The notes beneath the pieces are model-generated. The model made no database searches. It saw nothing but the letters and a program-made list of their open reading frames with translations, and was not told where the DNA came from. The position numbers were made by a program, and so were the translations under genes. This document shows positions 359 to 34,674 of a DNA stretch of 64,000 bases, in pieces. Within the stretch, counting starts at the first letter, position 1; each line of letters starts with the position of its first letter. The stretch covers positions 372,001 to 436,000 of the forward strand of contig NW_026782484.1 of NCBI RefSeq assembly GCF_031769215.1. The letters are read 5' to 3'. Origin of the DNA: Ylistrum balloti (lineage: Eukaryota).

Positions 359-438
359 CGTCACATTAAATCAGTACGACACGTGGAAGGGGCCAAGGTA
401 ACAGGAAGTCACGGTACTGGCAGACAGGGGCTATAAAA
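359..438 (+). promoter_or_regulatory. Promoter cassette of paralogue 1 (CGTCAC, E-box CACGTG, ETS-like AACAGGAAGTCAC, TATAAAA)
   Basis: Motifs at 359, 380, 400 and 432; conserved in all five paralogues; TATA lies ~31 nt before the inferred exon 1. Confidence 0.75.
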
Positions 439-610
439 GGGTCAGAGATGAAGAGAAACCTCACACTCAGCTGGTAAGTTTACAAGGCTATGCCTCGATA
501 AAGTCATGTGTTTGTGAACTATTAGTGTTTTCTTTAAGACAAACCACTTAGGTTTTTATATGTATGCTATTGATATTAACTAGTGATAATTTTTATGTAT
601 TCCAGTCACC

Positions 611-1292
611 ATGAAGTCGTCATCTGTCGCCCTTATTGCGATTTGCCTCTGTCTCGGCGTGTCATGCGCCTTTGGAGCCGGATATGGTTCCGATTATCAT
701 GATTCCTACGGAAGCAATGGAGGTGGATACAACATAGGATATGGTTATGGAAGCGAATACGGAAGTGGTTACGGAAGCGGATACGGAAGTGGTTACGGAA
801 GCGGATACGGACACTCCAAGGGATACGGAAAGGGATACGGAAAGGGATACGTCTCCACCGAGACCATCATTAGACAACCTTACCTCCAGCCAGTCGCTCC
901 CCCACCACTACCACCACCCGACAATGACGAAGGTCTTTTTGGACTCGGCGGATCTGGACTTCTGTGTAAGTAATTTAGCTGTTAAAATATCTATATTTGT
1001 CTTTTTTGTATCATATTGATTACATTTCTCAATTTCCTTATATCTCTTGTTAGACCATTTACCCCTTTTCCGAGATCTACAACGGATGTATTCATCGGTA
1101 GACGTTTGTCCCAACTCTGACGTCCGCTGTGCATTGTTATACTACCTACCTGCTATATTTATAGATGCAAATGTCTATAACCATGTATTATTTTCATATT
1201 TATGTTTTGTACTTATCTTATAATGTGACCTTTCATTTACAGTGCTCGGTCTGCCCCTCCTTCTTCTCTTGAGGAACTCCAACTCCGGTTAA
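611..1292 (+). CDS. Secreted Gly/Tyr-rich structural protein, paralogue 1 (134 aa; CDS join 611-965,1243-1292)
   Basis: ATG after acceptor TTCCAG (605). Signal-peptide-like N-terminus [20 protein letters not shown], then GSGY/GKGY repeats and a PPP hinge. Phase-1 donor GTAAGT at 966 and acceptor CATTTACAG at 1242 give the C-terminus [16 protein letters not shown]. Inferred non-coding exon 1 ~463-473 (donor 474); exon 3 ends 1330; exon 4 starts 1782 with ATTAAA at 1859. Composition resembles shematrin/prisilkin-class matrix proteins, but no orthology is claimed. Confidence 0.9.
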
Positions 1293-1964
1293 ACTCCTGA
1301 CTCTTCTTACTATAGAAGCAACTCTGTGATGTAAGTATATATATCTCCGTAAGAGTCAACGATCAAATTATGCTTTGAATATAAGTTTTCCACTTCAAAA
1401 GATCTACCATATATTTTTAGTAATTAAAGAACGGCGAAATTTTGTTTAGAATAACAATCAAAAGATAGAATATTGAAAAAGAAGACTGCTTATTTAGGCC
1501 GTTCAAAGGGGTATGCATTTATGAGTCTTCTTTCAGTTCTAGAATGAATCAATGTATACAATTACACGGGATGAAAGCTTATCTAGCAGAAAAAAACTAG
1601 AAATGAAAATAAAAACTACTTCCTGCCTTGTACAGTACAATACAGTGCTTATATCGAAAAAAATAAACGTCTTCTTTTTCTCTTTTGTGATTATTTTCCA
1701 AGAGTGTGGCACAAATGTTCTGATCATCATCTTAGTTTTTAAATTTCGATTGTCTAAACTGTGTTTTTCTTTCCTTTCCAGACATCGCGCAATATTGACA
1801 GTTGTTACCAGTTCGTCTGTGTGGATCTTATTTGTATGCTTGTACTATTGTTACGTTGATTAAAAAACAATTAAGAAAAACAACAGTGTTTTATTTCTCA
1901 TTTCATATGGTATTGGCGATTCAACAATTACGTCAGTTTGAATGACAAAAAGTATAGTCGGTGG

Positions 1965-2090
1965 TTAACTGAAAAAGGCACATTGACTGATGAGTCAGTA
2001 GACGCATTGACTGATGAGTGAAATGACACATTAAATAAGGAGTGAAAAGATAAATTCATTGACGAGTGAAAAGACAAAGATCAATGATAG
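1965..2090. repeat. ~24-bp tandem repeat GACACATTGACTGATGAGTGAAAA (also ~7725-7860 and ~13990-14160)
   Basis: Direct repeats just downstream of exon 4 in each duplication unit, with variable copy number. Confidence 0.75.
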
Positions 2091-2781
2091 CTGCACGCGA
2101 CGAGATATTTGGACGGTAGATGAGATTTACGAATGATTATAATGCCATATGACTTTCTAAAAGTTATTCATTGGTTAAGGAAGCACCACACAATAATGAA
2201 CATATATTGATACATTTGAGTTCATTCCTTGATCATTTAATATTTTTGACCGTATTTCTCATTTCATCTTTACTCATTATCTTGTCAGAGTAACCCCCCC
2301 CCCAAAAAAAAAAAAAACAAAAAAACAAAAAAAACACCCAAACAAAACAAAAAAAATGACGTATTGAAGACCTCGTCACGTGATAATGAACACATGACAC
2401 ATAAAGTAGTAACTGCCCTTTTCAAAACGTATGTCCAATCATAATATTAAACGTTAGTGTTGGATATTTATCATAACTATTTTAGCACAAGCAAACCAAA
2501 CACATTAGGACCACTTTTATTCTTGTTTATTGAATTCAGGCGGATGATTTTCATTAGCATTTCAATAATACAGCCAATCAGGGTCATGATATCATATTTC
2601 TTGTTTAAGTAGGTCACACTGTTAATTGTCGCTTTTGTTTCAATAATACCATCAATAAGGGTCATGATGCAATGTTTCTTGTTGATGTAGGTTAAACTGT
2701 TATTTGTTACTTGGATTTTGATAATACCACCAATCAGAGTCATCAAGGCATATGTTTAGTTTATGTAGGTCAGGTGGTTAT

Positions 2782-3873
2782 TTGTTGCGGTTTGGTAAAA
2801 ATGGTTGACTTATATTACGGATTGAAAATTAAACAGATAATTCCTTACGTTATTACTCAATAACGATCTTATGAATATTAAGTTTGATCGATGATTATGA
2901 AAGTCTTTTCAATTCGACAGTTTTCGAAATAACACTGGACCTGTATTAATCATTCTTATCGTATATAGTTTTACACCTTAGAAAGTGGCGAGTAGTGGTG
3001 CCTCAGGCAACAAAAGTTTACCTGTATACGGGTATATACGTTACAGGTCTGAATCCGTAAACAATGTTTGAGATTTACCTGATCATATATACATAATGTT
3101 TTTTACAAAATAAATGAAAAATGAGACTAATACAGAAGTAATAAAAAACATTCCTTTCTGACGTTATCAGATTTTAAATGATCCATTCTGTATCATAAAG
3201 AAACGTCCATTTAATGTTTACATATAAAATATATGGGTGGGGTATGTTGTTCTAAAAATTACTTTTAATTTGTTAGAACACCATGGTGGTTTTTGATCCC
3301 CAACTTAGGACCAAATGTCTTCTTATGTAAAATTTGTGTTCATGCTTGAAACTCTTATGTTTCAAGTTCGTCGTTTATATAGTAATAAACGGCCAATTTC
3401 AATCATAGCTGATCTTTTGTCTTGTCTTTTATGCTTATACATTTGGTCCAACTTGCTTGCCCTCACGTCTGTCATGTATGAATATATATACAATATGTGT
3501 CTGTACACAAAAGCTGATTACGTATAACTCTATGTACACAAATCACTTCACATTATAAGTATATCTTACTATTTAGTGTGTATATATCTACAAGTGTTCG
3601 ACCTATATACTAATGACTTAATCAGGAAATATACTTTGTACTTATATATACTTATGTGTTTATATATATTTTGAAAAAATAAATAACCCCTATCCCACAC
3701 TTATTTATAAGTCATTTCTAAATTTATATCAACCACGATAGAATCGCACATTTCTGCGATAGAACTGCACAAAGTGCGATAGCTTAGATTGTCAAGTTTT
3801 CCTATCGTGCCCACATCGTACAGACATCGTGCGCATATCGCACATAATGTAAATTTGTGCTATCCCACAACTG
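2782..3873. mobile_element. Non-autonomous TA-flanked (Tc1/mariner-type) MITE, right part
   Basis: Ends ...TTGTGCTATCCCACAACTG then TA (3874-3875). The reverse complement matches the terminus at 8620 in unit 2 at 15/19 nt. The satellite resumes in register after the TA. Confidence 0.6.
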
Positions 3874-4104
3874 TATTTGTTACTAGTATTTCAATGATAA
3901 CACAATCAAGGTCATGATGTCATATACATTGTATCTAGTTTGTCTAGATGGATCTGTTAATTGTTAAAAGTATTTCAATTATAAACCCATCAGGGTCACA
4001 GTATCATTTTTCTTAGGTCAGGTTGTTAATAGTTGCTAGTATTTCAATTATATAACCAATCAGTTACATGGATAGGATGGTTATGAGTACCAATGTTATG
4101 AAAG

Positions 4105-4600
4105 TCAGATTAAGTGGCAGTAAGGTGTCGATTGCGCAAATGCGCGAGACGAATAAACTTGTACTGACATTGTAACGTCACGCGCAGACGCCGAGACATA
4201 GGTCTGTCAGCAACTCGCCCAGTTTCCCTTAGACATCTAACAAGACGTTCTATACTGCAAATATTGACACTGAGACGTCTGGCAACCTGTATTTGCCTTT
4301 GACCTTGCATAACCATCGCAATGGCCTGACCCCTCTGAACCTCCGTCAGCCTTGCCATTGTTTTATGCTTTCAGAAATTAATCAAAATATCGGAAAATGT
4401 CTATATGAAGACTACCTAATTGTATGACGCGCAATGTAACCCAATGTCACAACACTGATGTGCACGAGATTTTCGTACTTTCCTCGGAAGACATCGTCAC
4501 ATCATACAATAATGCGACGTTCAATACAGGACTACGTGCACTGTAACCTAAAGAGTTTCTTTACCGATTTTCATTGCTTTGTTTAACAACTCGCTCGCAG
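4105..4600 (-). mobile_element. Tc1-family transposon remnant: 5' end and N-terminal HTH region
   Basis: ORF 4110-4358 MARLTEVQRGQAIAM...VARRL...RETGRVADRP resembles a Tc1/Tc3 paired-HTH region; terminus abuts TA at 4601-4602. Confidence 0.8.
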
Positions 4601-5849
4601 TATATTTTTAGTGTATGTAGTACAGGCAGTCATTTGTTGCTAATAATTCAATTATACCACTAATCAGAGCCATGATATTATATTTCTTGTTGATGAAGGC
4701 AAGGGTGTTAAATGTCGCCTTTGTTTTAATAATACCACTTATCAGGTCATGATGTAATATTTCTTGTTGAAGTAAGCCATACTGTTAATTATTTCAGGTA
4801 TTTCAATAATAACATCCACCAGAGTCGTGATGTCAGATTTCTTGTTGAAGTAGGTCAGACTGAAAATTGTTACCAATAGTTTGATGATGCTACCAATCGG
4901 TGTCATGGTATCATATTGCTAGTTTATGCAGGCCATGCTGTTATTAGTTACTTATACTTCAATACTAAAAGAATCATTGTAATCGTGTCGTATTTCTCTT
5001 TTATGTAGGTTATGCTGTTAATTCTTAATAGTGTTTCAATGATGCCACCAATCAGTGTTATGATGTCATATTTCTTTAAAAATCCCATCATACATTTTAC
5101 TAACATAAACATATAAACACTGTAAAAAAATACAGAAAAAAATCACAGAGCCGAATATTTTAAATAAATCTCACGTGATTGAACAGTACAGCTAGTAATC
5201 CAACACCAGTAAACAAAAGTGTAACACAGATGGGGGAACCTTATTACAGCTAGTGATCCCAAAACATCAAACAAATGTCTAACACATCGTGGTGTAGAGG
5301 GGTTCTCAGGTAAATATCCAATGGAAACGTCTGAGGTGTAAAAACGATAGTACAAAAGACACATAATTGAGAAGAGCATTAGAATTAGATATAGAAGTGT
5401 CAAATAATTACCTATACTGCACCATACAGCTGTTTCGTCCTTCTAGGATCCGTCAATGATGCTGGGGGCTTTTAAGTACACTAATAAAATCACTATGTAG
5501 CGAGTTTGGTATGACAAGCTATAAAGAGTGGAAATTTACAATGTGACTCTTTCACTGTAATATTTATAGTTAAATAAAACAAATTTGTGACAGATGTGTT
5601 TACTATTGATATCATGTCGTATTGATGCATTACACAGTCGTGAATATAAAAAAAATTGAAAAAAATAACTCAATATTGCTATATGTCGAAGGTTATTGCT
5701 ATAATAAACATGCGTATATATAAATGTATCACTACTCAGAACTTAAAAAAGTAGTAAAATTAATTTGCATTTGATTCATCATATCCCTGTTCCTACAGAT
5801 GTAAGTATTACTGTGTAAATGTCGGTAACTGAAGACCGTTCCGGCCATA

Positions 5850-5929
5850 CGTCACATTAAATCAGTATGACACGTGGAAGGGGCCAAGGTAACAGGAAGT
5901 CACGGTATTGGCAGACAGGGGCTATAAAA
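5850..5929 (+). promoter_or_regulatory. Promoter cassette of paralogue 2
   Basis: Motifs at 5850, 5871, 5891 and 5923. Confidence 0.75.
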
Positions 5930-6191
5930 GGGTCGGAGATTAACAGAATCTTTACACTCAGCTGGTAAGTTTACATGGCTATGTCTCGACAAAGTAATGT
6001 GTTTGTGAACTTAAGTGAATTTAAGTTTAATGGATCAGATGTTAAGATACATTATTTTATATTTACAATTGGTTAATTTAAGTCAAATGGATGTGGTGAT
6101 TATAACTGTTTTCTTTACCACAAATAACTTAGGTTTTTATATGTATGCTATTGATATTAACTAGTGATAATGTTTATGTATTCCAGTCACT

Positions 6192-6841
6192 ATGAAGTCG
6201 TCATCTGTCGCCCTTATTGCGATTTGCCTCTGTCTCGGCGTGTCATGCGCCTTTGGAGCCGGATATGGTTCCGATTATCATGATTCCTACGGAAGCATTG
6301 GAGGGGGATACAACATGGGATATGGTTATGGAAGCGGATACGGAAGTGGTTACGGAAGCGGATACGGACACTCCAAGGGATACGGAAAGGGATACGTCTC
6401 CACCGAGACCATCATTAGACAACCTTACCTCCAACCAGTCGCTCCCCCACCACTACCACCACCCGACAGTGACGAAGGTCTTTTTGGACTCGGCGGATCT
6501 GGACTTCTGTGTAAGTAATTTAGCTGTTAAAATATCTATTTTTGTCTTTGTTGTTTCATATTAATTACATATCTCGATTTCCTTATATTCCTTGTTAGAC
6601 CATTTACCCCTTTTTCCGAGATCTACAACGGATGTATTCATCGGTAGACCGTTTGTCCCAACTCTGACGTCCGCTGTGCATTGTTATACTACCTACCTGC
6701 TATAGACATCGGTGCAATGGTATATAACTATGTATTATTTTCATATTTATGGGTTTTTTTTTTATTTTATAATGTGACCTTTCATTTACAGTGCTCGGTC
6801 TGCCCCTCCTTCTTCTCTTGAGGAACTCCAACTCTGGTTAA
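6192..6841 (+). CDS. Secreted Gly/Tyr-rich protein, paralogue 2 (122 aa; join 6192-6510,6792-6841)
   Basis: Same exon plan: exon 1 ~5954-5964, exon 2 6187-6510 (donor GTAAGT), exon 3 6792-6879, exon 4 from 7538, ATTAAA at 7615. Frame intact. Confidence 0.9.
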
Positions 6842-8619
6842 ACTCCTGACTCTTCTTACTATAGAAGCAACTCTGTGATGTAAGTATATCTAACTCCACA
6901 AAAGTCAACAATCAAATTATGCTTTGAATTGATTATCATCGTTTTATGGCCGTCATATAATTGTTAAGTCAATTCTGCACAAGTGTCTCTTGATATTGAT
7001 TTTTGCTCAATAGTGATTGACCCCTTACGTCGTTTTCCACTTGAAAAGATCTACCATAATATTTTAATTATTGAAGAACAGCGAAAATTTGGTTAGAATA
7101 ACACTGTTAAAAGATAGAATATTGAGAAAGAAGACTGCTCATTTAGGCCGTTCAAAGGAGTATACATTTATGAGTCCTCTTTCAGTTCTAGAATGAATCA
7201 GTGTATACAATTACACGGAATGAAAGCTTTAATCATCATTTTTGTCTTACTGTGAAACATGTCAATCATTAGTTGCGTGAATGTGACCTAGTTTATTATT
7301 TTTTTGACGTTTAAGCTTAATTATAGGATCTGGTACTTATCTAGCAGAAAAAACTAAAAATGAAAATAAAAACTACTTCCTGCCTTGTACAGTACAATAC
7401 AGTGCTTATATCGAAAAAATAAACGTCTTCTTTTTCTCTTTTGTGATTATTTTCCAAGAGTGTGGCACAAATGTTCTGATCATCATCTTAGTTTTTAAAT
7501 TTCGATTGTCTAAACTGTGTTTTTCTTTCCTTTCCAGACATCGCGCAATATTGACAGTTGTTACCAGTTCGTCTGTGTGGATCTTATTTGTATGCTTGTA
7601 CTATTGTTACGTTGATTAAAAAACAATTAAGAAAAACAAGTGTTTTATTTCTCATTTCATATGGTATTGGCGATTCAACAATTACGTCTGTTTGAATGAC
7701 AAAAAGTATAGTCGGTGGTTAACTGAAAAAGACACATTGACTGATGAGTCAGTAGAAGCATTGACTGATGAGTGAAAAGACACATTAAATAAGGAGTGAA
7801 AAGATAAATTGATTGACGAGTGAAAAGACATGAACTGGGGAGTGAAAAGACACACTGTACAAAGATCAATGATAGCTGCACGCGACGAGACACAGACGGA
7901 AGATGAGATTTACGAATGATTATAATGCAATATGACAAGTCTTTCTAAAAGTTATTCATTGGTTTAGGAAGCACCAAACAATAATGAACATATATTGATA
8001 CATTTGAGTTCATTCCTTGATCATTTAATATTTTTTTACCGTATTTCTCATTTCATCTTTACTCATTATCTTGTCAGATTACCCCCCCCCCCCCAAAAAA
8101 AAAACAAACAAACAAAACAAAACAAAAAAACATTACTTATTGAAGACCTCGTCACGTGATAATGAGCACATGACACATAAAGTAGTAACTGCCCTTTTCA
8201 AAACGTATGTCCAAACATAATATTAAACGTTAGTGTTGGACATTTATCATAACTATTTTAGCACAAACAAACCAAACACATTAGGACCACTTTTGTTCTT
8301 GTTTTTTTTTAATTCAGGCAGATAATTTTCACTAGCATTTTAATAATACAGCCAATCAGGGTCATGATATCATACATGTATTTCTTATTGAAGTAGGTCA
8401 CACTGTTAATTGTTGCTTTTGTTTCAATAATACCATTAATAAGGGTAATGATGAAATGTTTCTTGTTGATGTATGTTAAGCTGTTATTTGTTACAAGGAT
8501 TTTGATAAGTCATGTTTTTAGTTTATGTAGGTCAGGTAGTTATTTGTTACTAAAAATTCAGTAATACAACGAATTAAGGTCATGGTATCATTTTCTTGTT
8601 GATGTAGGTCAGGTTGTTA

Positions 8620-10401: not shown

Positions 10402-11685
10402 TATATTTTTAGTTTATGTAGTACAGGCAGTTATTTGTTGCTAATAATTCAATTATACCACTAATCAGAGCCATGGTATCATATTTCTTGTTGATGAAGG
10501 TCAAGATGTTAATTGTCTTGTTGAAGTAAGCCATGCTGTTAATTATTTCTAGTATTTCAATAATAACATCCACCAGAGTCGTGATGTCAGATTTCTTGTT
10601 GAAGTAGGTCAGACTGAAAATTGTTACCAATAGTTTGATGATGCTAACAATCAGTGTCATGGTATCAAATGCTAATTAATGTAGGTCTTGCTGTTATTTG
10701 TTAATTATATTTCAATAATTAAAATCATTCTAATGGTGTCGTATTTCTCTTTTATGTAGGTCATGCTGTTAATTATTTATAGAGTTTCAATGATGCCACC
10801 AATCAGTGTTATGATGTCATATATTTTTTAAAAATTCCATCATACATTTTACTAACCTAAACATATAAACACTGAAAAAACACAGAAAAAAATCACAAAC
10901 CGAATATTTTAAATAAATCTCACGTGATTGAACAGTACAGCTAGTAATCCAACACCAGTAAACAAAAGTGTAACACAGATGGGGGAACCTTATTACAGCT
11001 AGTGATCCCAAAACATTAAACAAATGTCTAACACATCGTGATGTAGAGGGGTTCTCAGTTTAATATCCACTGGAGAAGTCTGAGGTGTAAAAACGAAAGT
11101 ACGAAAGACACATAATTGAGAAGAACATTTTTGTGCAATCTAGAATTAATAATTACCTAAACTGCATCATACAGCTGTTTCGTCCTTCTAGGATTCGTCA
11201 ATGATGCTGGGGGCTTTTAAGAACACAAATAAAATCACTATATAGCGAGTTTGGTATGACAAACTATAAAGAGTGGAAATTTACAATGTGACTCTTTCAC
11301 TGTAATATTTATAGTTGAATTTGAAATAAAACAAATTTGTGACAGATGTGTTTACTATTGATTTAAAAGTTTATTTTAATTAACAATGATGTTATATCAC
11401 GATGTAAACAACTCATTTGGCACCAAGAACATTTATAATGCGTATATAATGTTGCATTGATGCATTACGCAATCGTGAATATAAAGATAATATGTAAAAA
11501 TAACTCAATATTGCTATATGTCGAAGGTTTTTGCTATAATAAACATGCGTATATATAAATGTATCACCACTCAGAACTTAAAAAAAGTAGTAAAATCAGT
11601 TTGAATTTCATTCATCATATCCCTGTTCCTACAGATGTAAGTATTACTGTGTAAATGACGGTAACTGAAGACCCCTTCGGCCATA

Positions 11686-11765
11686 CGTCACATTAAATCA
11701 GTATGACACGTGGAAGGGGCCAGGGTAACAGGAAGTCACGGTACTGGCAGACAGGGGCTATAAAA
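11686..11765 (+). promoter_or_regulatory. Promoter cassette of paralogue 3
   Basis: Motifs at 11686, 11707, 11727 and 11759. Confidence 0.75.
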
Positions 11766-11948
11766 GAGTCGGAGATGAACAGAATCCTTACACTCAGCTG
11801 GTAAGTTTACATGGCTATGCCTCGATAAAGTCATGTGTTTGTGAACCATCAACTTAAGATTAGTGTTTTCTTTAACACAAACCACTTAGATTTTTATATG
11901 TATGCTATTGATATTAACTAGTGATAATTTTTATGTATTCCAGTCACT

Positions 11949-12899
11949 ATGAAGTCGTCATCTGTCGCCCTTATTGCGATTTGCCTCTGTCTCGGCGTGT
12001 CATGCGCCTTTGGAGCCGGATATGGTTCCGATTATCATGATTCCTACGGAAGCATTGGAGGTGGATACAACATGGGATATGGTTATGGAAGCGGATACGG
12101 AAGTGGTTACGGAAGTGGTTACGGAAGCGGATACGGACACTCCAAGGGATACGGAAAGGGATACGTCTCCACCGAGACCATCATTAGACAACCTTACCTC
12201 CAGCCAGTCGCTCCCCCACCACTACCACCACCCGACAATGACGAAGGTCTTTTTGGACTCGGCGGATCTGGACTTCTGTGTAAATAATTTAGCTGTTAAA
12301 CTATCTATTTTTGTCTTTGTCGTGTCATATTAATTACATTTCTTGATTTCCTTATATCTTTGTGATAGACCATTTATCCCTTTTTCGAGGTCTGCAACGG
12401 ATGTATTCACAGGAAGACCATTTGCCCATGTTCTGATATCTACTATGGATGTATTCATAGGAAGACCATTTGCCCACGTTCTGATATCCACTATTTTGTA
12501 TTCATAGGAAGACCATTTGCCCATCTTCTGATATCTACTATGGATGTATTCATAGGGAGACCATTTGCCCATCTTCTGATATCCACTATTTTGTATTCAT
12601 TGGTAAATCATTTGCCCATGTTCTGATATCTACTATGGATGTTTTTATTGGTAAATCATTTGCCCATGTTCTGATATCTACTATGGATGTTTTTATTGGT
12701 AGACCGTTTGTCCCAACTTCGACGTCCATTGTATATTGTTATACCACCTAAACGTTTTTTTTCTTCTACTATTGATACCATGCTATGTAACCCTGTATTT
12801 CATACATATAAGTCGATCACTTATTCTATGACCTATCTTTCATTTACAGTGCTCGGTCTGCCCCTCCTTCTCCTGTTGAGGAACTCCAACTCTGGTTAA
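11949..12899 (+). CDS. Secreted Gly/Tyr-rich protein, paralogue 3 (126 aa; join 11949-12279,12850-12899)
   Basis: Exon 1 ~11790-11800, exon 2 11944-12279 (variant donor GTAAAT), exon 3 12850-12937, exon 4 from 13770, ATTAAA at 13847. Frame intact. Confidence 0.87.
12400..12735. repeat. 47/48-bp minisatellite (~7 units) in intron 2 of paralogue 3
   Basis: GATGTATTCATAGGAAGACCATTTGCCCATGTTCTGATATCTACTATG repeated; single-copy at the homologous sites 1085-1130 and ~6630-6680. Confidence 0.9.
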
Positions 12900-14659
12900 A
12901 CTCCTGACTCTCCTTACTATAGAAGCAACTCTGTGATGTAAGTATATCTATCCCGATATAGGTTAATTTTACTTTGAATATAACATTATTTGATTGTTTA
13001 TTTACTGTAATATGACTTTAAAGTTGATTTAACAATGATAATTTTCTCTTGATATCTATTTCTGCTAAATAATCGTTTGCCCAAAACTCCGTTATCAAGT
13101 CCAAAAGGTCTACTACCATAAGTTTAAAGATATTAAAGAACGGCGGAAAATAGGTTAGAATAACACGGTTAAAGATTGAATATTGAAAAGGAGGACTGCA
13201 TACTTTGGCCGTTCCGTTGGCATGCATCTATGGATATTATTTTAGTATTTATCACTGAAGGCAAATTCATGGAATGAAAATTTTTATTATCATTAATATT
13301 ATTTCAGTTAGATGTGAAACACGTCAGTCAGCAATTACGATAATATGACCTAGTTTATCAGACATTTTTAGTTAAATTCTAGGATCTGGTACTTACCTAG
13401 CAGAATACATAATAACTGCAGTTTTCGCTCCAAAAAAGAAATTTGTCAGAAATTAAACAGTAATATTTTTATTTTGCACCCTCCTCTTCGAATTTAGTAA
13501 ACACAAATATTAATTTTTCGATATGATACTATATTCAGCTGACCTTAAAATGTTTTTCCTGTTACCAGTAATGTTATCACTAAGAGGCCCATGATGTCAC
13601 CTCGCCTTTAAATATACTTCCTGCCTTGTACAGTACAATACAGTGCTTATATCGAAAAAATAAACGTCTTCTTTTTCTGTGTTTGTGATTATTTTCCTAG
13701 AGTGTTCTGATCATCATCTTAGATTTTATTTTTCGATTATCTAAACTGTGTTTTTTCTTTCCTTTCCAGACATCGCGCAATATTGACAGTTGTTACCAGT
13801 TCGTCTGTGTGGATCTTATTTGTATGGTTGTACTATTGTTACGTTGATTAAAAAACAATTACGAAAACCAGTGTTTTATTTCTCATTTTACATTACAATG
13901 GCGATTCAACAATTACTCGGAAATGATATGTTATCAGTGGCTGTTATGACACAGTGACTAGTGACGTCAGTTTGATTGAGGAAACAGTTGATGGCTACCT
14001 GAAAAGACACATTGACTGAAGAGTGAAAAGACATATCGACTGATGAGTGAAGAGACACATCGACTGATGAGTGGAAAGACATATTGACTGATGAGTGAAA
14101 AGACGCATGGAATGAGGAGTGAAGAGACACATTGACTGATGAGTGAAAAGACACACTGTACAAAAATCAATGATAGCGGTACGCGACGAAACACTTTTAC
14201 GGACTAGTCTTTCTTAAAGTAATTTATAGTTAACGCAATAACAAACAATAAGAGGGACAAAGCCATAGCTTTAGTAATCAACTCATCTGGAATACAATTT
14301 TGTAATTTTCATTTCAATTACACTGATACGTGTCTTCCATATATTATCATAGCAAAAGCAAGTTCTTAATCAAGGAAGTAAAATTCAATAAAAGAAAGTA
14401 CACGGAGAAGTAGACCAGGTGTCCCGGAATGGAACTCTTTAAATCCCATTAATGTTAAACCAAAATGTGAACGAAAAAAAAGTTTTACACAATAGTGTAT
14501 GTACTTGAGTGATAGATAAAGATGTTGTGATACATTTCCCATTTTATAACAATCTCCTTGGGACTAATGTATGAGATGCTTGATAAATTTACTCCTGAAC
14601 CCTCAGTCATCTTTTGCCGTCTTTATCCGGCGAAAATAATCGTTACGAATTACGTAACA

Positions 14660-20219: not shown

Positions 20220-20358
20220 NNNNNNNNNNNNNNNNNNNNNNNNNNNNNNNNNNNNNNNNNNNNNNNNNNNNNNNNNNNNNNNNNNNNNNNNNNNNNNNNN
20301 NNNNNNNNNNNNNNNNNNNNNNNNNNNNNNNNNNNNNNNNNNNNNNNNNNNNNNNNNN
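20220..20358. other. Assembly gap (139 N)
   Basis: Run of N. Confidence 1.
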
Positions 20359-20791
20359 GTTATTATATCTAAAATATTTAAGGCAAAAATAAAAACTGTT
20401 TTTTGGGGTTTTTTTTTTTGTTTTGTAAAACTTGGACCATTCTCACTTTACCCGTGGAAAAGAAATAAAAAACCAAACGACACAGTAAACAGATTTAGAA
20501 ATGAAGTATTCAATATTGTATCCATTATATTCCATTTCAAAAATTTGTCCTCAGTTACTGAAAGTGTCTCAGAAATAAGAAGAAAACTGAGTCTAAAAAC
20601 AAGATTTGTTCTGAATATAACAGCATGAACAATGTTCATGTGTCCTGTTTCATGGATTTCTCATCCTTGTAACATGTAACAGAGACTTGACCTAACACTA
20701 TTACAGTGGTATGATTGATATGTCTGCTAACTTTTACTTAACATGATTTAATGTCCGACACTCCGGGTACTCTGACACGCCTCTGGCCCTT

Positions 20792-20871
20792 CGTCACGTT
20801 ACCTACACATGGCACGTGGAAGGTTGCCGGGAAACAGGAAGTCACAGGACTGGTGGAAAGGGGCTATAAAA
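20792..20871 (+). promoter_or_regulatory. Promoter cassette of paralogue 4
   Basis: Motifs at 20792, 20813, 20833 and 20865; same spacing as copies 1-3 although the spacer sequence has diverged. Confidence 0.75.
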
Positions 20872-21185
20872 GGGACGGAGACCAACAGGATCCTCACACA
20901 AAGCTGGTAAGTCTCCATTGCTATACAGCAATAACTTACATGTTCTAGATGATGTTTGTAACTGGTCTTATTATTCCTTAACATTAATGTTACATATTGC
21001 TAACTTTGCAATATTTTCTTGTAATAATTACCTACAATAGATCTTTCCTTATGTTTTAGACATTTTGAAATGCAATGAAATTATGTGTTAAACTTTATAT
21101 GTAGTGTGAAGAGTGATTATAAATATTTTGTTTAATCCATATTCATACGTTCATCTGTTTGAAATTTCCGTTTTTTCCAGTCACC

Positions 21186-21848
21186 ATGAAGTCGTCATCT
21201 GTCGCCCTTATTGCGATATGCCTCTGTCTCGGTGTGTCATGCGCACTGGGAGCCGGATACGGATCCGGATATAACAGCTATGATTCCTACGGAGGCCACG
21301 GAGGCGGGTACAGCATGGGATATGGTTATGGAAGCGGATACGGAAGTGGTTACGGAAGCGGATACGGACACTCCAAGGGATACGGAAAGGGATACGTCTC
21401 CACCGAGACCATCATTAGACAACCTTACCTCCAGCCAGTCGCTCCCCCACCACTACCACCACCCGACAATGACGAAGGTCTTTTTGGACTCGGCGGATCT
21501 GGACTTCTGTGTACGTAACATTGCTTTGTCCATGGTCATGTTTTTGATATCTTATTCCAAAGGTCGATACCTCGCACTACATACAGATTATTTCCGATAA
21601 CTGAGAATTGCAGTATGTTGTATGAGACAGAATACATCCTGAAAACATACATAATGAGCCGCAATGATTCCGTTATTTAATTGAAATATGCTTAAATTAC
21701 ATATAATCCTATTATTTTGCATGCACCTTATTGTTTTTCTGTAATCGTTTGTCTCTACCTCTGCTGAATTATACTATAATATATCCTTTCATTTACAGTG
21801 CTCGGTCTGCCCCTCCTTCTTCTCTTGAGGAACTCCAACTCCGGTTAA
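21186..21848 (+). CDS. Secreted Gly/Tyr-rich protein, paralogue 4 (124 aa; join 21186-21510,21799-21848)
   Basis: Exon 1 ~20896-20906, exon 2 21181-21510 (donor GTACGT), exon 3 21799-21886, exon 4 from 22192, ATTAAA at 22269. Frame intact. Confidence 0.88.
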
Positions 21849-22366
21849 ACTCCTGACTCTCCTTACTATAGAAGCAACTCTGTGATGTAAGTATATCTAA
21901 CTCCACAAGAGTCAATTCTGCTTTGAATATGATTATCGTCGTTGTATGGCCGTCATAAGATTGTAAAGTCATTTTTACACAAGATCGTCTTCTCTTGATT
22001 AGGATTTCCAGCAAAAACAGTTATCCCTGCTTTCAAAATTCTAACTGTGCTTGTTACGTATAGTGTGTTCGTGCTACGCTTTTTTAAGTGTTAAACTAAA
22101 AGCGTGATTATTTTTTATATAGCAGTGTTCTTCAAATTATCGTATGTTTTCCATTCAAATTATCTAACCTGTGTTTTTCTTTCCTTTCCAGACATCGCGC
22201 AATATTGACAGTTGCTACCAGTTCGTCTGTGTGGATCTTATTTGTATGCTTGTACTATTGTTATGTTGATTAAAAAAAATAAGACAAAACTTAAGTTTTC
22301 ATTTTTTATTTTAAAGTTTGACGTTATATGACAGATAAGCAGATATATTAGTAACTTAGTGACGAT

Positions 22367-22533: not shown

Positions 22534-22848
22534 CTTTATTTTCACTTCGTCGTCAAAATTCCACTTGATCATTTCACTGACGAAATCAGTACGAAATAAT
22601 CGTTGTTTATTAATAAATACAGTAGCATTGTATACAACTGGTCATTTGTTCCAGAACTCGTCAGTGATTATAGAGATCAAACACAATCATAATAAATAAG
22701 TACAAATCTTAATCAGGAAAATGCCAAAGAGTCACACACTAGACCAGCCTACTAGTATATTATAGGCACTTAATCGAAGAAATCTTATCCGGTTACATAA
22801 TCAAACATACAGTGATGTGACGTGTATATTAAACATGTAGTATATATA

Positions 22849-23988: not shown

Positions 23989-24007
23989 TATCGTCAGTTT
24001 CCTTTAC

Positions 24008-26511: not shown

Positions 26512-26665
26512 CACATGCACATGTGTTTCCGAAGCTGTGAAGCATTCCAGACACATGTGTTTCCGAAGCTGTGAAGCGTTCCAGACGCATGTGTTTCCGA
26601 AGCTGTGAAGCGTTCCAGACACATGTGTTTCCGCAGCTGTGAAGCGTTCCAGACGCATGTGTTTC
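26512..26665. repeat. 34-bp tandem repeat, ~4.5 units
   Basis: GACACATGTGTTTCCGAAGCTGTGAAGCGTTCCA. Confidence 0.9.
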
Positions 26666-27094
26666 CGAGATCATTATTTGCTTCTGAAACCAATTTTAAA
26701 TCGGGTATTCAGGATTGAATAATCAGTGTAGTTTATCGATAACATTGAATTTTCTGAAATCCTTGCTTCGACTGACTGTTTAAATAAAAGTACTGCAAAA
26801 GTGAGCTTGTTTATACAATGCAGTTTGTAAAATATTAAAATAATCACGTTTCCGTTTTCAATTTGTGAATATAAAATACAATTAAGAAAAAATGGATTGC
26901 TACATTATCAGAGGATCATACGTTACACAAAATCATGCAGAGAGCATTTTTCAATACAAATTCAATAATTATAGGTTAAGTATTTACCAAATAATTAATG
27001 AAGGATTAGTAAGTAATGAGATATGTGGAAATCTAGAAGGAGAATTTAAAGAACAGAATATTAGAATATCAACGAAACGTTTCATTAACTCCAG

Positions 27095-27895
27095 AATTCA
27101 ACAAATATCAGAATATAAATAGGAGGTTTACTAACCCCAGAATTCAGCGAATATCAGAATATAACTAAAGAGGTTTACTAACACCAGATTTCAATAAATG
27201 TCAGAATGATTTACAAACCCCAGAATTCAACAAATATCAGAATATAAATAAGGAGGTTTACCACCCCCAGAATTCAGCAAATATCAGAATATAAATAAGG
27301 AGGTTTACCACCTCCAGAATTCAGCAAATATCAGAATATAAATAAAGAGGTTTACTAACCCCAGAATTCAGCAAATATCAGAATATAAATAAAGAGGTTT
27401 ACTAACCCCAGAATTCAGCAAATATCAGAATATAAATAAAGAGGTTTACTAACCCCAGAATTCAGCAAATATCAGAATATAAATAAGAATGTTTAGTAAC
27501 CCCTAAATTCAGCAAATATCAGAATATAATAAAGAGGTTTAATAACCCCTAAATTCAGCAAATATCAGAATACAAATAAGGAGATTTACTAACCCAGAAT
27601 ACAGCAAATATCAGAATATAACTAAAGAGATTTACTAACCCCAGATTTCAATAAATGTCAGAATGATTTACAAACCCCAGAATTCAACAAATATCAGAAT
27701 ATAACTAAAGAGATTTACTAACCCATGAATTCAACAAATATCAGAATATAAATAAGGAGGTTTACCACCTCCAGAATTCAGCAAATATCATCATATAAAT
27801 TAGGAGATTTACTAACCTCAGAATTCAGCAAATGTTAGAATATAAATAAGGAGGTTTAATAACCCCAGAATTTAACAAATATCATCATATAAATA
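27095..27895. repeat. 47-bp minisatellite, ~16 units
   Basis: CAGAATTCAGCAAATATCAGAATATAAATAAAGAGGTTTACTAACCC; period of 47 at 27301, 27348 and 27395. Confidence 0.92.
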
Positions 27896-28313
27896 AGAAA
27901 GATAATACATGATTTTAAGACATCGCTTTTATACATTATGATGTTTGAATACTTATATCAAGAAAATGGATCCCGACGTTATTAAACGTACAACTTCCAA
28001 TGTATATTGACGTACACTGTAACTAGATATCAAAAGTGCATATAAAAGGTGAATATTTCACTTCAGTACAAAATCGTTGAAATATTCATCATGGAATAAG
28101 ATAGATTTTGTAATATATTTCGAAAAAGTTCAATGGTGAGAGAATCATAAAGAATTTTAATGCAGAAAAAAAATCAATTCATGACACTTAAGCAACGTAA
28201 AGCATATTAGATGCAAAAGTATTAGCTGTGTTAACAAACCAAGAAGTTGTTGAATAACTGATTTATTTAATGTATTAGTTTAAGTCCGGTACTGTGATAT
28301 GCCCCCGGCTCTC

Positions 28314-28387
28314 CGTCACGTTACGTTATGTACGGCACGTGGAAGGGACCGTTAGAACAGGAAGTCACGCTGCCCGGACCTATATAA
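28314..28387 (+). promoter_or_regulatory. Promoter cassette of paralogue 5
   Basis: CGTCAC 28314, CACGTG 28336, AACAGGAAGTCAC 28356, TATATAA 28381. Confidence 0.7.
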
Positions 28388-28565
28388 GGGCCAGCACCAA
28401 CCTCCATCGTCACATCAAGCTGACGTCCAACAGGTAAGGTAGTACACATGATAAGGGGTATAATGATAAAAAATGTATCATACTATGAATTTAACTTTCG
28501 CCTGGGAAATATGTTCATTCTGAATAAAATCGCTTATTTCGAATGTTTTTTCCCTTGCAGTCACC

Positions 28566-30093
28566 ATGAAGTCATCATCTGCAGCACTAATTGCGATATG
28601 TCTCTATCTGGGTGTGTCATGCGCACTAGGAGCCGGATACGGATCCGGATATAATAGCTATGATAATTATGGAGGCGGATACAGCATGGGTTACGGAAGT
28701 GGTTACGGAAGTGGTTACGGCAGTGGCTACGGAAGCGGATATGGACACTCCAAGGGATACGGAAAAGGATATGTCTCCTCCGAGACCATTATTAGACAAC
28801 CTTACCTCCAACCCGTAGCGGCCCCACCACCAGTGGAGGAAAACGATGGTCTTTTTGGATTAGGTGGATCTGGACTTCTGTGTAAGTGATATTTTAAAAA
28901 ATTATATTAGTAATACTATTATGACTGGTTCATAGGTTCCAGTTCCTGAATATAAGATTTCCCATGCAGTGTTTGACTAGTTTTGTATTCGCCTAATATA
29001 TCCTGCTTTCTACCACAATGGTGGTGTTATTCAACTCCAAAGGCTTCAATTGATCATTCCAAGGGCCCTCAACACGCTCACAAAAATCAGAAGGCTTAAA
29101 ATGTAGTCCACGGTAGGTTTTGTAGTAATTTGATTTAAAGATAACAAATCAATTTATTTCAAGCTGTGATTGGTAAGAGTTTTATTATTACTAAGTATTT
29201 CTGATATTGTCAGTTTCGTACCTTATTTATCTACTTTTGACTAAAGGTCGTATCATTACGCCCCAACTGATGACGTAGAAATACACTAGATTACAGAATA
29301 GGTCAATTTAACTTTGGGATGAATTTTTTATTGGTAGAAACAGTTCACACAGTCTCGTGGTTGTTATAAATGGTAATTTTCCACTCCGTTAGTTATTTTC
29401 CAAAAGTCTTTAAAACACTCGTTAAATAATATATTTTTTGTAACTTTTGAAAAAAATGAACTCGAGTGGCAAAAATACTATATATCTCATGCACTCGTTG
29501 TATGGCTTCTACATAAACGGTGCTCTACCATTGACGCCAGTTTTAAATAGAGTTTGGTCTTTAAGTCCAATTTCAACTGTGGCATTAAGGCAAGTTTTAA
29601 AAGTTCAGCGATTTTAAACAGTGCTCGGCAATTCACTCAAGGTTAAAGATCGGCAAATCACTGGATGTTTAAAACAGTGTTTATCCATTCACTTTAGGTT
29701 TAAACAGTGTACGGGCATTCGCCCCAAGTTGAAACAGTGTTCGGCCATTCACTCTAGGTTGAAGAAGTGTCTGGTCTTTAACACCGATTTTAAACAGTAA
29801 TTTGCCATTACCCCAGTTTTCAATAGCGTTAGATTTTCAACTCATCTTTTTAACATTAACCCCAGTTTTATAACTCATTCAATTTTTATCAACAGCTTTG
29901 AATAGTGTTCAGGAATGACGAATTAATCAACACCAATTTCAGCTATCTGCTGTCTTGGCAGATTTACAGATGTAGTAATCTTACTACAGTTCTTCTAACG
30001 TGTGTTTATTTAAATGTTTATGTCATCTAACCTTTGTTTACAGTGCTCGGTCTACCCCTCCTTCTCCTCTTGAGGAACTCCAACTCTGGTTAA
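28566..30093 (+). CDS. Secreted Gly/Tyr-rich protein, paralogue 5, most divergent (121 aa; join 28566-28881,30044-30093)
   Basis: Exon 1 ~28412-28433 (donor GTAAGG), exon 2 28561-28881, exon 3 30044-30131, exon 4 from 30705, ATTAAA at 30779. Hinge is PVAAPPPVEENDG; the tail protein is identical to the other four. Confidence 0.88.
29610..29830. repeat. Degenerate 30-bp repeat in intron 2 of paralogue 5
   Basis: AAACAGTGT.CGG.CATTCAC....GGTT recurring. Confidence 0.6.
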
Positions 30094-30259
30094 ACTCCTG
30101 ACTCTCCTTACTATAGAAGCAACTCTGTGATGTAAGTATACACACTTGTTACCAATGTCATTTTGTAGTGTTAAAATCTAACCAATACTGGCGAGATATA
30201 TAATGTTTTAATACTTCCGCTTTACTAATTTACTACAAATGTAGAAATTTTAATCAGAT

Positions 30260-30470
30260 CATAATCAACCTCGTTTTATTAAAAATCTAGTAAAACATAA
30301 TCAACCTCGCTTTATCATAAATCTAGACATACATTATCACCTTCGCTTTAATATAAATCTGGTTTATATGTATTACCAACCTTGCTTTACTATAAATATA
30401 TTTACATATGATCATCCTAGCTTCAGTATTAATCTAGATATATATTATCACCTTCGCTTTACTTAAAATT
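30260..30470. repeat. Degenerate ~37-bp repeat in intron 3 of paralogue 5
   Basis: TCAACCTCGCTTTA....AAATCTAG recurring. Confidence 0.55.
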
Positions 30471-30849
30471 ACTTAAGCTCTTGTTATTACCCTAAACATA
30501 GTTATTAATATAAACCTCCTTATTTGGCACCGATTAATGATTATCACCATTCAGCTATAAGAGTCAGGCATAATTTATCTTTTACGTTTGATGTTGTTCA
30601 GTTTTACATGGCTTATTTTTCTACCGTAACGATCGAACTGTGAAGTTATTGTTGATTATTGTTGGCGAGAGTTGATCTAATTAGGATTTTCTGTTTTTTT
30701 TCAGATATTGCGCAATATTGACAGTTAACATTTCGTCTGTGTTTTCTTTATTTGTATACTGGTGATATTCTTATGGTGATTAAACTGATGCTAATATAAA
30801 CTACGGTGTTATTGTTTTATGTTGATCGTTGCTAGGAAACGTGTCGGGA

Positions 30850-32390: not shown

Positions 32391-32499
32391 ACAAAATATA
32401 CAACAACAACATTACAAAGGAGAGAGAGAAATATAATTAAACTAAAACACAATACAGAAACAAAATATACAATATACCCTAGGACAAAATATACAACTC

Positions 32500-34670: not shown

Positions 34671-34674
34671 ATCC

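What the first reader, a model, noticed from the sequence alone, without database searches (positions are those of the whole stretch)
359..30790. Five-gene array of an unassigned secreted Gly/Tyr protein family with a Pro hinge and an invariant hydrophobic tail
Seen: five intact paralogues with signal peptide, (GSGY)[11 protein letters not shown], [14 protein letters not shown], poly-Pro, an acidic linker and [27 protein letters not shown]. The 16 residues from exon 3 are identical in all five. Established: Gly/Tyr-rich secreted proteins (shematrin, prisilkin-39, KRMP class) build mollusc shell and other extracellular matrices, often through Tyr oxidation and cross-linking. I do not recognise this architecture, especially the Leu tail, as a named family. 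Inference: a membrane-tethered or self-assembling, cross-linkable matrix protein amplified for dosage.
Basis: partly seen in the sequence, partly recalled or inferred. Interest (0 to 1): 0.75.

Follow-up and report, generated by a model that had tools for sequence, protein, structure and literature searches.

The report
Scallop Gly/Tyr-rich greasy-tailed gene array
The saucer scallop carries a tandem array of small, transcribed genes for glycine/tyrosine-rich secretory proteins that end in a conserved greasy tail, members of a family seen only in scallops and oysters that nobody has characterised.

Summary
The window (Ylistrum balloti, G000:C627:372001-436000) carries five intact + strand paralogues. 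A sixth lies 7 kb upstream of the window. Seven more diverged copies sit in two other clusters of this genome.

- **Gene plan:** each gene has four exons: a short 5'UTR exon behind a conserved TATA promoter, one large coding exon, an 88-nt tail exon, and a non-coding exon 4.
- **Assembly gap:** the N gap at 20220-20358 is intergenic, about 420 nt upstream of copy 4's conserved promoter block, and touches no exon.
- **Selection:** exon 2 has dN/dS 0.05-0.33, with dS up to 0.65. The tail exon has no amino-acid change.
- **Transcription:** RNA contigs from two public runs cover the exons only and cross the exon 2/3 junction.
- **Family:** no Pfam family passes its cutoff, and motif and accession searches found no paper. 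An exhaustive HMM search of 1.84 billion proteins recovered about 20 true relatives. Every named one is a pectinid or an oyster carrying only an automatic name.

My best reading is a membrane-tethered, disordered Gly/Tyr-rich surface or matrix protein. The tether would be a type I helix or a GPI signal. Tissue and function remain inferred. The same scan already noted this family on other DNA of this genome (s1-254143, s1-254201).

The parts
344..473 (+). Copy 1 conserved promoter block and 5'UTR exon 1. ACGTCAC 358-364, E-box CACGTG within 380-391, ETS-like CAGGAAGT 402-409, TATAAAAG 432-439. Exon 1 ends at 473 (CAGCTG|GTAAGT).
   Evidence: The block is conserved in all five copies while the flanks are not.
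606..965 (+). Copy 1 exon 2. The CDS starts at 611. It encodes the signal peptide, the (GYGS)n domain, the [14 protein letters not shown] motif, the Pro run, DNDE and [11 protein letters not shown], with a phase-1 donor.
   Evidence: RNA contigs begin at 606/607.
1243..1330 (+). Copy 1 exon 3, the tail micro-exon. It encodes the last 16 residues (stop 1290-1292) and carries 38 nt of invariant 3'UTR.
   Evidence: RNA crosses the junction from the exon 2 end to 1243 (tables 5 and 7).
1782..1885 (+). Copy 1 exon 4, non-coding, with ATTAAA at 1859-1864. The 3' end is approximate.
   Evidence: Run X1 has depth in bin 1801-2000.
5840..5964 (+). Copy 2 promoter block and exon 1 (TATA 5923-5930, donor after 5964).
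6187..6510 (+). Copy 2 exon 2 (ATG 6192).
6792..6879 (+). Copy 2 exon 3 (stop 6839-6841).
7538..7640 (+). Copy 2 exon 4 (ATTAAA 7615-7620). The 3' end is approximate.
11679..11800 (+). Copy 3 promoter block and exon 1 (TATA 11759-11766, donor after 11800).
11944..12279 (+). Copy 3 exon 2 (ATG 11949). Its donor is GTAAAT.
12850..12937 (+). Copy 3 exon 3 (stop 12897-12899). Intron 2 is enlarged to 570 nt by a 48-bp tandem repeat at 12399-12715.
13770..13875 (+). Copy 3 exon 4 (ATTAAA 13847-13852). The 3' end is approximate.
20220..20358 (.). Assembly gap (N). It is intergenic, lies in DNA with no homology to the other units, and is about 420 nt upstream of copy 4's conserved promoter block.
   Evidence: The gap was not filled or looked up.
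20777..20906 (+). Copy 4 promoter block and exon 1 (TATA 20865-20872, donor after 20906).
21181..21510 (+). Copy 4 exon 2 (ATG 21186). Its donor is GTACGT.
21799..21886 (+). Copy 4 exon 3 (stop 21846-21848).
22192..22295 (+). Copy 4 exon 4 (ATTAAA 22269-22274). The 3' end is approximate.
28285..28433 (+). Copy 5 promoter block and exon 1 (E-box-containing box 28336-28347, ETS-like site 28358-28365, TATATAAG 28381-28388, donor CAG|GTAAGG after 28433).
28561..28881 (+). Copy 5 exon 2 (ATG 28566). This is the most diverged copy in the window, with [10 protein letters not shown] and AAPPPVEEND.
30044..30131 (+). Copy 5 exon 3 (stop 30091-30093). Intron 2 is 1162 nt.
30705..30805 (+). Copy 5 exon 4 (ATTAAA 30779-30784). 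The 3' end is approximate.

Best explanation
Each gene encodes a protein of about 120-135 aa that enters the secretory pathway through a cleavable N-terminal signal peptide. Its C-terminal Leu-rich segment then holds it at a membrane.

That segment is the end of exon 2 ([11 protein letters not shown]) plus the tail exon, about 21 hydrophobic residues with one Pro, followed by RNSNSG. It acts either as a type I transmembrane helix with a 6-residue cytosolic stub (about 40%) or as a GPI-attachment signal that is swapped for a lipid (about 30%).

The exposed part is intrinsically disordered. It consists of a (GYGS)n-GYGKGY low-complexity domain, a short conserved motif (T-x-[IV]-[IVY]-x-x-P-Y-x-x-P), and a proline-rich stalk ending in acidic or Asn residues at the membrane.

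I infer that the Gly/Tyr domain makes multivalent Tyr-based contacts, possibly fixed by oxidative cross-linking. That would form an abundant pericellular coat or a matrix component delivered from the membrane by a secretory epithelium.

The array of at least six genes, differing in repeat number, supplies dosage and length variants.

Shown here: gene structure, intactness, purifying selection, transcription and splicing, a helical hydrophobic tail in paralogues, disorder, and named relatives only in pectinids and oysters.

Inferred: membrane topology, cross-linking, tissue and role.
For: - Five intact copies with canonical splice sites and a shared phase-1 intron.
- Only the promoter block and the four exons are conserved between old copies.
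- Exon 2 dN/dS is 0.05-0.33 with dS up to 0.65. The tail exon has dN = 0, with 4 variable sites, all synonymous.
- RNA: run X1 covers exon 2, exon 3 and the bin holding exon 4, plus a high-copy repeat at 5401-5600, with nothing in the introns or the rest of the spacer. Single unitigs reach k-mer depth of about 1,950. One joint skips the 277-nt intron 2.
- RNA: a contig from an oligo-dT seawater metatranscriptome (X2) reads exon-2 end ...GGACTTCTGT directly into 1243.
- Hydrophobic N- and C-terminal windows have Kyte-Doolittle 19-residue means of 1.6-2.5 in eight full-length relatives.
- The AlphaFold model of RefSeq paralogue P0001 has only two helices, at residues 3-21 and 107-119. The rest has pLDDT below 50-65.
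- The tail architecture (hydrophobic run, usually with a Pro, then 4-9 polar Asn-rich residues) is kept in all three clusters and in oysters.
Against: - No topology or GPI predictor could be run, and there is no experimental localisation.
- The polar stub lacks positive charge in most relatives (NNNSG-type), which is unusual for a type I anchor.
- Polar residues after the hydrophobic run are atypical for GPI signals.
- The near-universal terminal Gly (20 of 21 tails seen) is explained by neither anchor model and hints at luminal processing.
- The tissue is unknown. No shell, byssus or egg proteome hit was found, although the supplements I could search were few.
- The tail exon's invariance extends to its non-coding bases, so it may reflect gene conversion or RNA-level constraint rather than protein function.
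Confidence: 0.5

Rival explanations
1. The protein is fully secreted and not anchored. The C-terminal hydrophobic segment passes into the lumen because it leaves the ribosome only after termination. The terminal Gly is used by peptidylglycine alpha-amidating monooxygenase (PAM), the luminal amidating enzyme, to give an amidated ...NS-NH2 end. The greasy tail then drives self-assembly, coacervation or lipid association of a cross-linkable Gly/Tyr matrix protein of the shematrin, eggshell-protein or resilin type.
For: - A terminal Gly is present in 20 of 21 tails across scallops and oysters.
- Only 4-9 residues follow the hydrophobic run.
- The nearest language-model neighbours are arthropod cuticle and pro-resilin-type proteins, but the score of 0.79 is below the tool's trust level.
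Against: - A run of 12 or more Leu-rich residues usually partitions into the bilayer.
- The one exception ends ...RNSNSAA (P0040).
- No proteomic detection.
- Amidation of a whole 100-aa protein is uncommon (my knowledge).
Confidence: 0.2
2. The genes encode precursors of immune effector peptides. The Gly/Tyr-rich part would be released as an antimicrobial peptide like nematode NLP/CNC or arachnid Gly-rich peptides. The Pro-rich, acidic and hydrophobic C-terminal part would serve as a pro-region or sorting signal.
For: - Tandem, lineage-specific, fast-evolving clusters.
- One oyster homologue is auto-named after the C. elegans Gly/Tyr protein F12A10.7.
- Basic pairs (KK, KR) sit at the end of the GY domain in several oyster and scallop relatives.
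Against: - The window copies have no dibasic site at that boundary.
- The mature part is net acidic, with K+R 3-4 against D+E 5-7.
- The most conserved parts are the C-terminal motifs, not the GY region.
- The similarity to F12A10.7 is compositional only.
Confidence: 0.1
3. The array is evolutionary debris: low-complexity ORFs carried along with a duplicated 5.6-kb unit, without a protein-level function.
For: - Units 1 and 2 are whole-unit duplicates at about 90% identity that include transposon remnants.
- The six array genes were not found among database proteins of 65-206 aa.
Against: - All copies are intact.
- dN/dS is 0.05-0.33 at dS up to 0.65.
- Between old copies only the promoter and exons are conserved.
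- Spliced, abundant RNA exists.
- The family is conserved between scallops and oysters.
Confidence: 0.03

Closest known systems
Sister clusters of the same bivalve family (Y. balloti XP_060069708/07, LOC132549779; M. yessoensis XP_021362355, OWF46134, LOC110456143; P. maximus XP_033732283; A. irradians XP_069122551/49; oysters XP_022290483, XP_061194557, XP_048747849, A0A8W8ITI1)
   Same: They share the signal peptide, the Gly/Tyr-rich domain, the T-x-[IV]-[IVY]-x-x-P-Y-x-x-P motif, the Pro-rich stretch and [DN]-x-G-[IL]-F-G-G. They also share the phase-1 intron, and a tail exon with a hydrophobic run, an Asn-rich stub and a terminal Gly.
   Different: The window subfamily is only 44-49% identical to them and uses (GYGS)n with [14 protein letters not shown]. 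It has an Arg after the hydrophobic run. No orthologue of more than 50% identity was found in other scallops. All relatives are uncharacterised and carry only automatic names.
Shematrin / KRMP / prisilkin-type Gly/Tyr-rich shell matrix proteins of pearl oysters
   Same: They are secreted, Gly/Tyr-rich, repetitive, lineage-specific, multi-copy and highly expressed in secretory epithelium (PMC4944945; my knowledge of Yano et al. 2006).
   Different: Those proteins end in a basic motif (RKKKY-type) or a GY region and have no hydrophobic tail exon (my knowledge). I did not test sequence homology. One oyster relative is merely auto-named 'shematrin-like protein 2'.
Gly/Tyr-rich cross-linked structural proteins elsewhere (trematode eggshell precursors, arthropod cuticle and pro-resilin-like proteins, high-Gly/Tyr keratin-associated proteins)
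   Same: They share the composition, the disorder, and the presumed reliance on Tyr contacts or oxidative cross-links. They also give weak profile or feature hits (PMC4944945 references).
   Different: All hits fall below curated thresholds: PF11759 scores 14.2 against a cutoff of 21.1, PF16208 scores 19.9 against 28.2, and the Atlas score is 0.79. None of these proteins has the conserved C-terminal module.
Small low-complexity surface proteins tethered by a C-terminal signal (plant arabinogalactan peptides, trypanosome procyclins, yeast GPI cell-wall proteins, sea-urchin/oyster MSP130)
   Same: The architecture is the same: signal peptide, short repetitive disordered ectodomain, C-terminal hydrophobic signal. 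Yeast shows a possible route from membrane tether to matrix (my knowledge).
   Different: There is no homology. GPI attachment is unproven here. The polar Asn-rich, Gly-ended stub after the hydrophobic run is not a feature of those signals.

Membership tests
Bivalve Gly/Tyr-rich tail-exon family (uncurated; RefSeq automatic names; scan notes s1-254143 and s1-254201) | Signal peptide, then GY-rich domain, then T-x-[IV]-[IVY]-x-x-P-Y motif, then Pro-rich stretch, then [DN]-x-G-[IL]-F-G. | tested here: met
   Alignments A1 and A2. The profile E-values of relatives are 7e-37 to 1e-6.
Bivalve Gly/Tyr-rich tail-exon family | A phase-1 intron just before a short tail exon that encodes a hydrophobic run, a polar Asn-rich stub and a terminal Gly. 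| tested here: met
   The split codon is TTG in all five copies, and the tail ends RNSNSG.
Shematrin | Signal peptide and Gly-rich repeats with Tyr or hydrophobic residues. | tested here: met
   (G+Y+S make up 54-58% of the mature exon 2 part). This is a match of composition only.
Shematrin | Basic C-terminal motif (RKKKY/RRKKY), as I recall from Yano et al. 2006. | tested here: not met
   The C-terminus is a Leu-rich run followed by RNSNSG.
Shematrin | Detectable sequence homology to Pinctada shematrins. | not tested
   I had no reference shematrin sequence in hand. None appeared among the 92 hits of the exhaustive search, as far as the retrieved sequences show.
High-Gly/Tyr keratin-associated proteins (PF11759) and keratin type II head (PF16208) | Pfam gathering score. 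| tested here: not met
   PF11759 scores 14.2 bits against a cutoff of 21.1. PF16208 scores 18.8-20.0 bits against 28.2.
Sulfur globule protein (PF17228), source of the RefSeq name of the paralogue | Pfam gathering score. | tested here: not met
   8.2-10.6 bits against a cutoff of 26.7, E-values 1-6.
Type I single-pass membrane proteins | N-terminal signal peptide plus a hydrophobic segment of about 19 or more residues with a Kyte-Doolittle mean of at least 1.6. | tested here: met
   The C-terminal 19-residue windows score 1.57-2.13 in eight full-length relatives. The P0001 model has a helix at 107-119. In the window genes the segment is 11 + 1 + 9 residues across the splice site.
Type I single-pass membrane proteins | Membrane integration with a cytosolic C-terminus. 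| not testable with these tools
   No topology predictor or experiment was available. Only the window subfamily and one Argopecten protein have a basic residue after the hydrophobic run.
GPI-anchored proteins | A small omega, omega+2 pair, then a spacer of about 6-8 residues, then a C-terminal hydrophobic run. | tested here: inconclusive
   The pattern [DNS]-x-[GST], then (I/L)FGGxG, then a 12-13-residue hydrophobic run fits in most members. However, 4-9 polar residues follow the run, and no GPI predictor was available.
C-terminally amidated secretory products | C-terminal Gly exposed in the lumen. | tested here: inconclusive
   The terminal Gly is present in 20 of 21 tails. Luminal exposure is not testable here.

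The most novel reading that the evidence does not exclude
The tail micro-exon may be a previously undescribed processing or anchoring module. It consists of a Leu-rich helix with one Pro, then an Asn-rich stub, then an obligatory terminal Gly. It is found in scallops and oysters. On this reading it delivers prion-like Gly/Tyr low-complexity domains to the cell surface, where they form a cross-linkable layer coupling a secretory epithelium to the extracellular material it builds (shell, periostracum or ligament). The family would have escaped earlier surveys because pipelines for silk-like structural proteins discard anything with a predicted transmembrane segment (PMC4944945, methods).
Probability: 0.15. 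Interest if true: 0.7.

Novelty: new variant of a known kind. Interest (0 to 1): 0.45.

Why it matters
Gly/Tyr-rich secreted proteins are core building blocks of mollusc shells and other tough extracellular materials. How such sticky, disordered proteins are handled and positioned by the secreting cell is poorly understood.

This family is abundant and conserved between scallops and oysters, and it couples that kind of domain to a conserved membrane-type tail. That gives a concrete handle on the problem: tag the protein, localise it, knock it down.

It also exposes a blind spot. Surveys that filter out predicted transmembrane proteins would never list this family. The six genes of this array were not found among the database's proteins, whereas their diverged paralogues were.

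Tried and rejected
- **Pfam** on four copies gave only sub-threshold, composition-driven hits.
- **Word search** with the non-repetitive residues 70-118 of copy 1 gave no hit.
- **Literature searches** for ten peptide motifs, six automatic names, twelve accession or LOC ids and the species name found nothing about this family.
- **Supplements** of three shell-proteome papers: none were held for two papers, and the third had no occurrence.
- **Rfam:** no family reached gathering score anywhere in the window. There was no hammerhead at the repeat at 5400-5600, only a chance snoRNA-like match with E = 0.23.
- **ESM Atlas:** the best score was 0.79, to arthropod cuticle-like clusters, which is below the level the tool calls meaningful.
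- **AlphaFold** on the RefSeq paralogue gave no fold beyond the two terminal helices, so I ran no fold search.
- **The look-up of encoding contigs** for an unnamed ENA relative returned no DNA and no informative neighbours.
- **UTR and promoter conservation** is confined to the C627 array and is not shared with the other clusters.
- **Abductin** (the scallop hinge rubber protein) was considered because of the FGG motif. I rejected it on composition from memory (Met/Phe-rich, not Tyr-rich) and did not test it.
- The exons were searched by reference, and full-length analyses used RefSeq paralogues.

Full report
**What is there**

The window is G000:C627:372001-436000 of a scallop genome. I identify the species as Ylistrum balloti. 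A paralogous locus in the same assembly (L009) encodes an exon 2 identical to RefSeq XP_060069708.1 of that species.

Six-frame motif searches and ORF listing find five + strand copies, with ATG at 611, 6192, 11949, 21186 and 28566. In each copy the large coding exon ends at a phase-1 donor (..CTGT|GTAAGT, with variants GTAAAT in copy 3 and GTACGT in copy 4). A tail exon begins after ..TTACAG. The split codon is TTG, and the remaining 15 codons read the same in all copies. The one correction is that copy 5 has [10 protein letters not shown] and AAPPPVEEND instead of the motifs quoted.

**Gene plan**

Aligning the regions downstream of the five tail exons shows two things:
- Exon 3 runs 88 nt, to ..GTGAT|GTAAGT, so it carries 38 nt of 3'UTR.
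- A fourth, non-coding exon begins after ..TTCCAG (c1 at 1782) and holds an ATTAAA (c1 at 1859-1864).

Upstream, each copy has a conserved block followed by a short exon 1 that ends ..CAGCTG|GTAAGT. The block contains:
- ACGTCAC (copies 1-3 only);
- an E-box (CACGTG);
- an ETS-like CAGGAAGT;
- a TATA box.

Between the older copies (1 against 4, 4 against 5), BLAST finds only these four islands. They are 344-479, 600-973, 1213-1359 and 1749-1903 in copy 1 coordinates. This is an independent footprint of the four-exon model. The stop codon lies 38 nt before the last exon junction, a distance that does not normally trigger nonsense-mediated decay (my knowledge).

**The gap**

The N run at 20220-20358 lies between copy 3's exon 4 and copy 4's promoter. 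Copy 4's conserved block starts at about 20777 and its E-box-containing box at 20813. The gap's flanks have no homology to any other unit. It interrupts no exon. Continuity across it is untestable, and I did not try to fill it. Spacing between copies 3 and 4 is 9.2 kb, against 5.6-5.8 kb for copies 1-3. Part of that excess is a 2-kb 42-bp satellite. A lost copy in the gap cannot be excluded.

**Extent of the family in this genome**

A six-frame search of the whole assembly finds 13 loci:
- the five in the window;
- a sixth intact copy 7 kb upstream of the window (C627:365012);
- five copies on C259;
- two copies on C124.

All of them have the tail exon: a hydrophobic run, then an Asn-rich stub ending in Gly. 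The phase-1 T|GT donor before it was confirmed in twelve of the 13. I did not place the exon 2 donor of L010.

**Selection and age**

Exon 2 is 84-99% identical between array copies, while introns and flanks are 71-94% identical. Nei-Gojobori estimates give dS of 0.04-0.19 among copies 1-4 and 0.34-0.65 for pairs involving copy 5 or the upstream copy. dN/dS is 0.05-0.33. The array is therefore not just a recent burst, because old copies are kept under purifying selection.

The tail exon has four variable sites, all at third positions and all synonymous, and no amino-acid change. However, its 38 non-coding bases are also almost invariant, and its dS is lower than that of exon 2. Gene conversion or RNA-level constraint on the micro-exon therefore contributes. 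The 'invariant tail' cannot be credited to protein function alone.

**Transcription**

One lay of three public runs on window 1-6000 was allowed.
- **X3** is DNA and covers every bin.
- **X1** (organism coded, 2015, type guessed as RNA) covers exon 2, exon 3, the bin holding exon 4 (1801-2000) and a high-copy repeat at 5401-5600, and nothing in intron 2, intron 3 or the rest of the spacer. Single unitigs reach k-mer depth of about 1,950. One joint skips 277 nt, which is the length of intron 2.
- **X2**, an oligo-dT seawater metatranscriptome, has a contig whose loose end before 1243 reads the exon 2 end (...GGACTTCTGT) of a close paralogue or allele. This is a spliced mRNA.

These are contigs, so I do not rank expression, and the tissue is unknown. 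Detection in seawater RNA is compatible with larval or gamete expression, but that is only a hint.

**Relatives**

- Pfam gives only sub-threshold hits driven by composition: keratin head, KRTAP, TrAA12 and sulfur globule protein.
- A word search with the non-repetitive residues 70-118 found nothing.
- A profile of twelve exon 2 translations found 15 proteins.
- An exhaustive HMM search of 1.84 billion representatives with a 20-sequence profile found 92 hits at E of 0.001 or below.
- By the shared motifs, about 20 of those hits are true relatives. The rest are Gly/Tyr-rich by composition only.
- All named relatives are Pectinidae (Ylistrum, Mizuhopecten, Argopecten, Pecten) or Ostreidae (Crassostrea/Magallana, Saccostrea, Ostrea). 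All have automatic or 'uncharacterized' names.
- No protein of the window subfamily itself, from any species, was in the database within 65-206 aa. The six array genes may therefore be unannotated or mis-modelled in RefSeq, which I could not check further.
- Searches for motifs, automatic names and accession numbers found no paper about the family.

**Protein features**

The mature exon 2 part is 54-58% Gly+Tyr+Ser and slightly acidic. In eight full-length relatives both termini carry hydrophobic 19-residue windows: Kyte-Doolittle means are 1.9-2.5 at the N-terminus and 1.57-2.13 at the C-terminus. The C-terminal window ends 0-9 residues from the protein's end.

AlphaFold on the RefSeq paralogue P0001, using the family alignment, gives a signal-peptide helix (3-21), a tail helix (107-119, pLDDT about 70) and disorder elsewhere (mean pLDDT 53.7).

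Across the family the conserved elements are:
- GYGKGY;
- T-x-[IV]-[IVY]-x-x-P-Y-x-x-P;
- a Pro-rich stretch;
- [DN]-x-G-[IL]-F-G-G-x-G;
- the hydrophobic run, usually with a Pro 3-5 residues from its end;
- an Asn-rich stub;
- a terminal Gly. The one exception is Argopecten P0040, which ends ...RNSNSAA.

**Mechanism**

I commit to a tethered, disordered Gly/Tyr surface or matrix protein, with confidence 0.5. Within that, a type I helix (about 40%) is slightly favoured over a GPI signal (about 30%).
- **For the helix:** the segment is long enough and very Leu-rich, it is more conserved than the ectodomain, and the window subfamily has an Arg on the far side.
- **For GPI:** a small-residue pair, [DNS]-x-[GST], sits 6-8 residues before a 12-13-residue hydrophobic run in most members. 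Most stubs carry no positive charge.
- **Against both:** neither model explains the terminal Gly. This keeps alive the rival that the tail is luminal and amidated (0.2).
- **Other rivals:** an antimicrobial-peptide precursor (0.1) fits the clustered, fast-evolving genomics. It does not fit the acidic mature part, the lack of dibasic sites in the window copies, or the fact that the C-terminal module is the best-conserved part. Non-functional debris is contradicted.

**Why it may have been overlooked**

The published survey of silk-like structural proteins removed every protein with a TMHMM-predicted transmembrane domain before looking for Gly-rich windows (PMC4944945, methods). A family with this tail would be filtered out.

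**Relation to the scan's earlier notes**

Two earlier follow-ups on other contigs of this genome (s1-254143, s1-254201) described the same family: a four-exon plan and a Gly-ended hydrophobic tail exon. They reached the same uncertain reading. My work agrees with them and adds:
- this six-gene array;
- its selection statistics;
- the nucleotide-level invariance of the tail exon;
- RNA evidence with a crossed splice junction;
- an exhaustive-search bound on the family's range.

**Limits**

Exons were used by reference, and full-length work used RefSeq paralogues.
- I took no contig for human.

Noticed in passing
window 344-440, 5840-5930, 11679-11766, 20777-20872, 28285-28388: A promoter block of about 100 nt is conserved in all five copies. 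It has an E-box (CACGTG), an ETS-like CAGGAAGT and a TATA box at fixed spacing. Copies 1-3 also have a CRE-like ACGTCAC. It could guide a search for the regulating factors and for co-regulated genes.
   Followed up: partly
window 1293-1330 and 1782-1865 (and equivalents in copies 2-5): The 3'UTR is split by an intron 38 nt after the stop codon. Both UTR pieces are about as conserved between old copies as the coding sequence. This suggests gene conversion or a post-transcriptional element. It is not shared with the C259 and C124 clusters.
   Followed up: partly
window 17107-19091, 24010-25664, 27086-27897, 31526-33805, 34673-35582, 37658-39748, 39991-42469, 45275-46186, 48929-50230: The window holds a dense series of minisatellites with periods of 22-131 bp. 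Two of them inflate the spacers between copies 3/4 and 4/5. The half of the window downstream of the array is largely satellite DNA with no convincing gene.
   Followed up: no
window 4110-4358 (-) and 9904-10206 (-): Remnant ORFs resemble the N-terminal helix-turn-helix part of a Tc1/mariner-type transposase. They are duplicated together with array units 1 and 2. This reading is by eye and was not searched.
   Followed up: no
window 5401-5600: This is a very high-copy genomic repeat: summed DNA contig depth is about 66,700 against about 10-30 for single-copy DNA. It shows 'goes back' joints and is also present in the RNA-like run X1. No Rfam family, including hammerhead, matches it.
   Followed up: partly
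window 12399-12715: A 48-bp tandem repeat (6.6 copies) inside intron 2 of copy 3 doubles that intron's length to 570 nt without disturbing the splice sites.
   Followed up: no
G000:C627:365012-365323 (L006:1501-1812): A sixth intact array member lies 7 kb upstream of the window, with a 125-nt intron 2 and an identical tail. The array is therefore cut by the window edge.
   Followed up: yes
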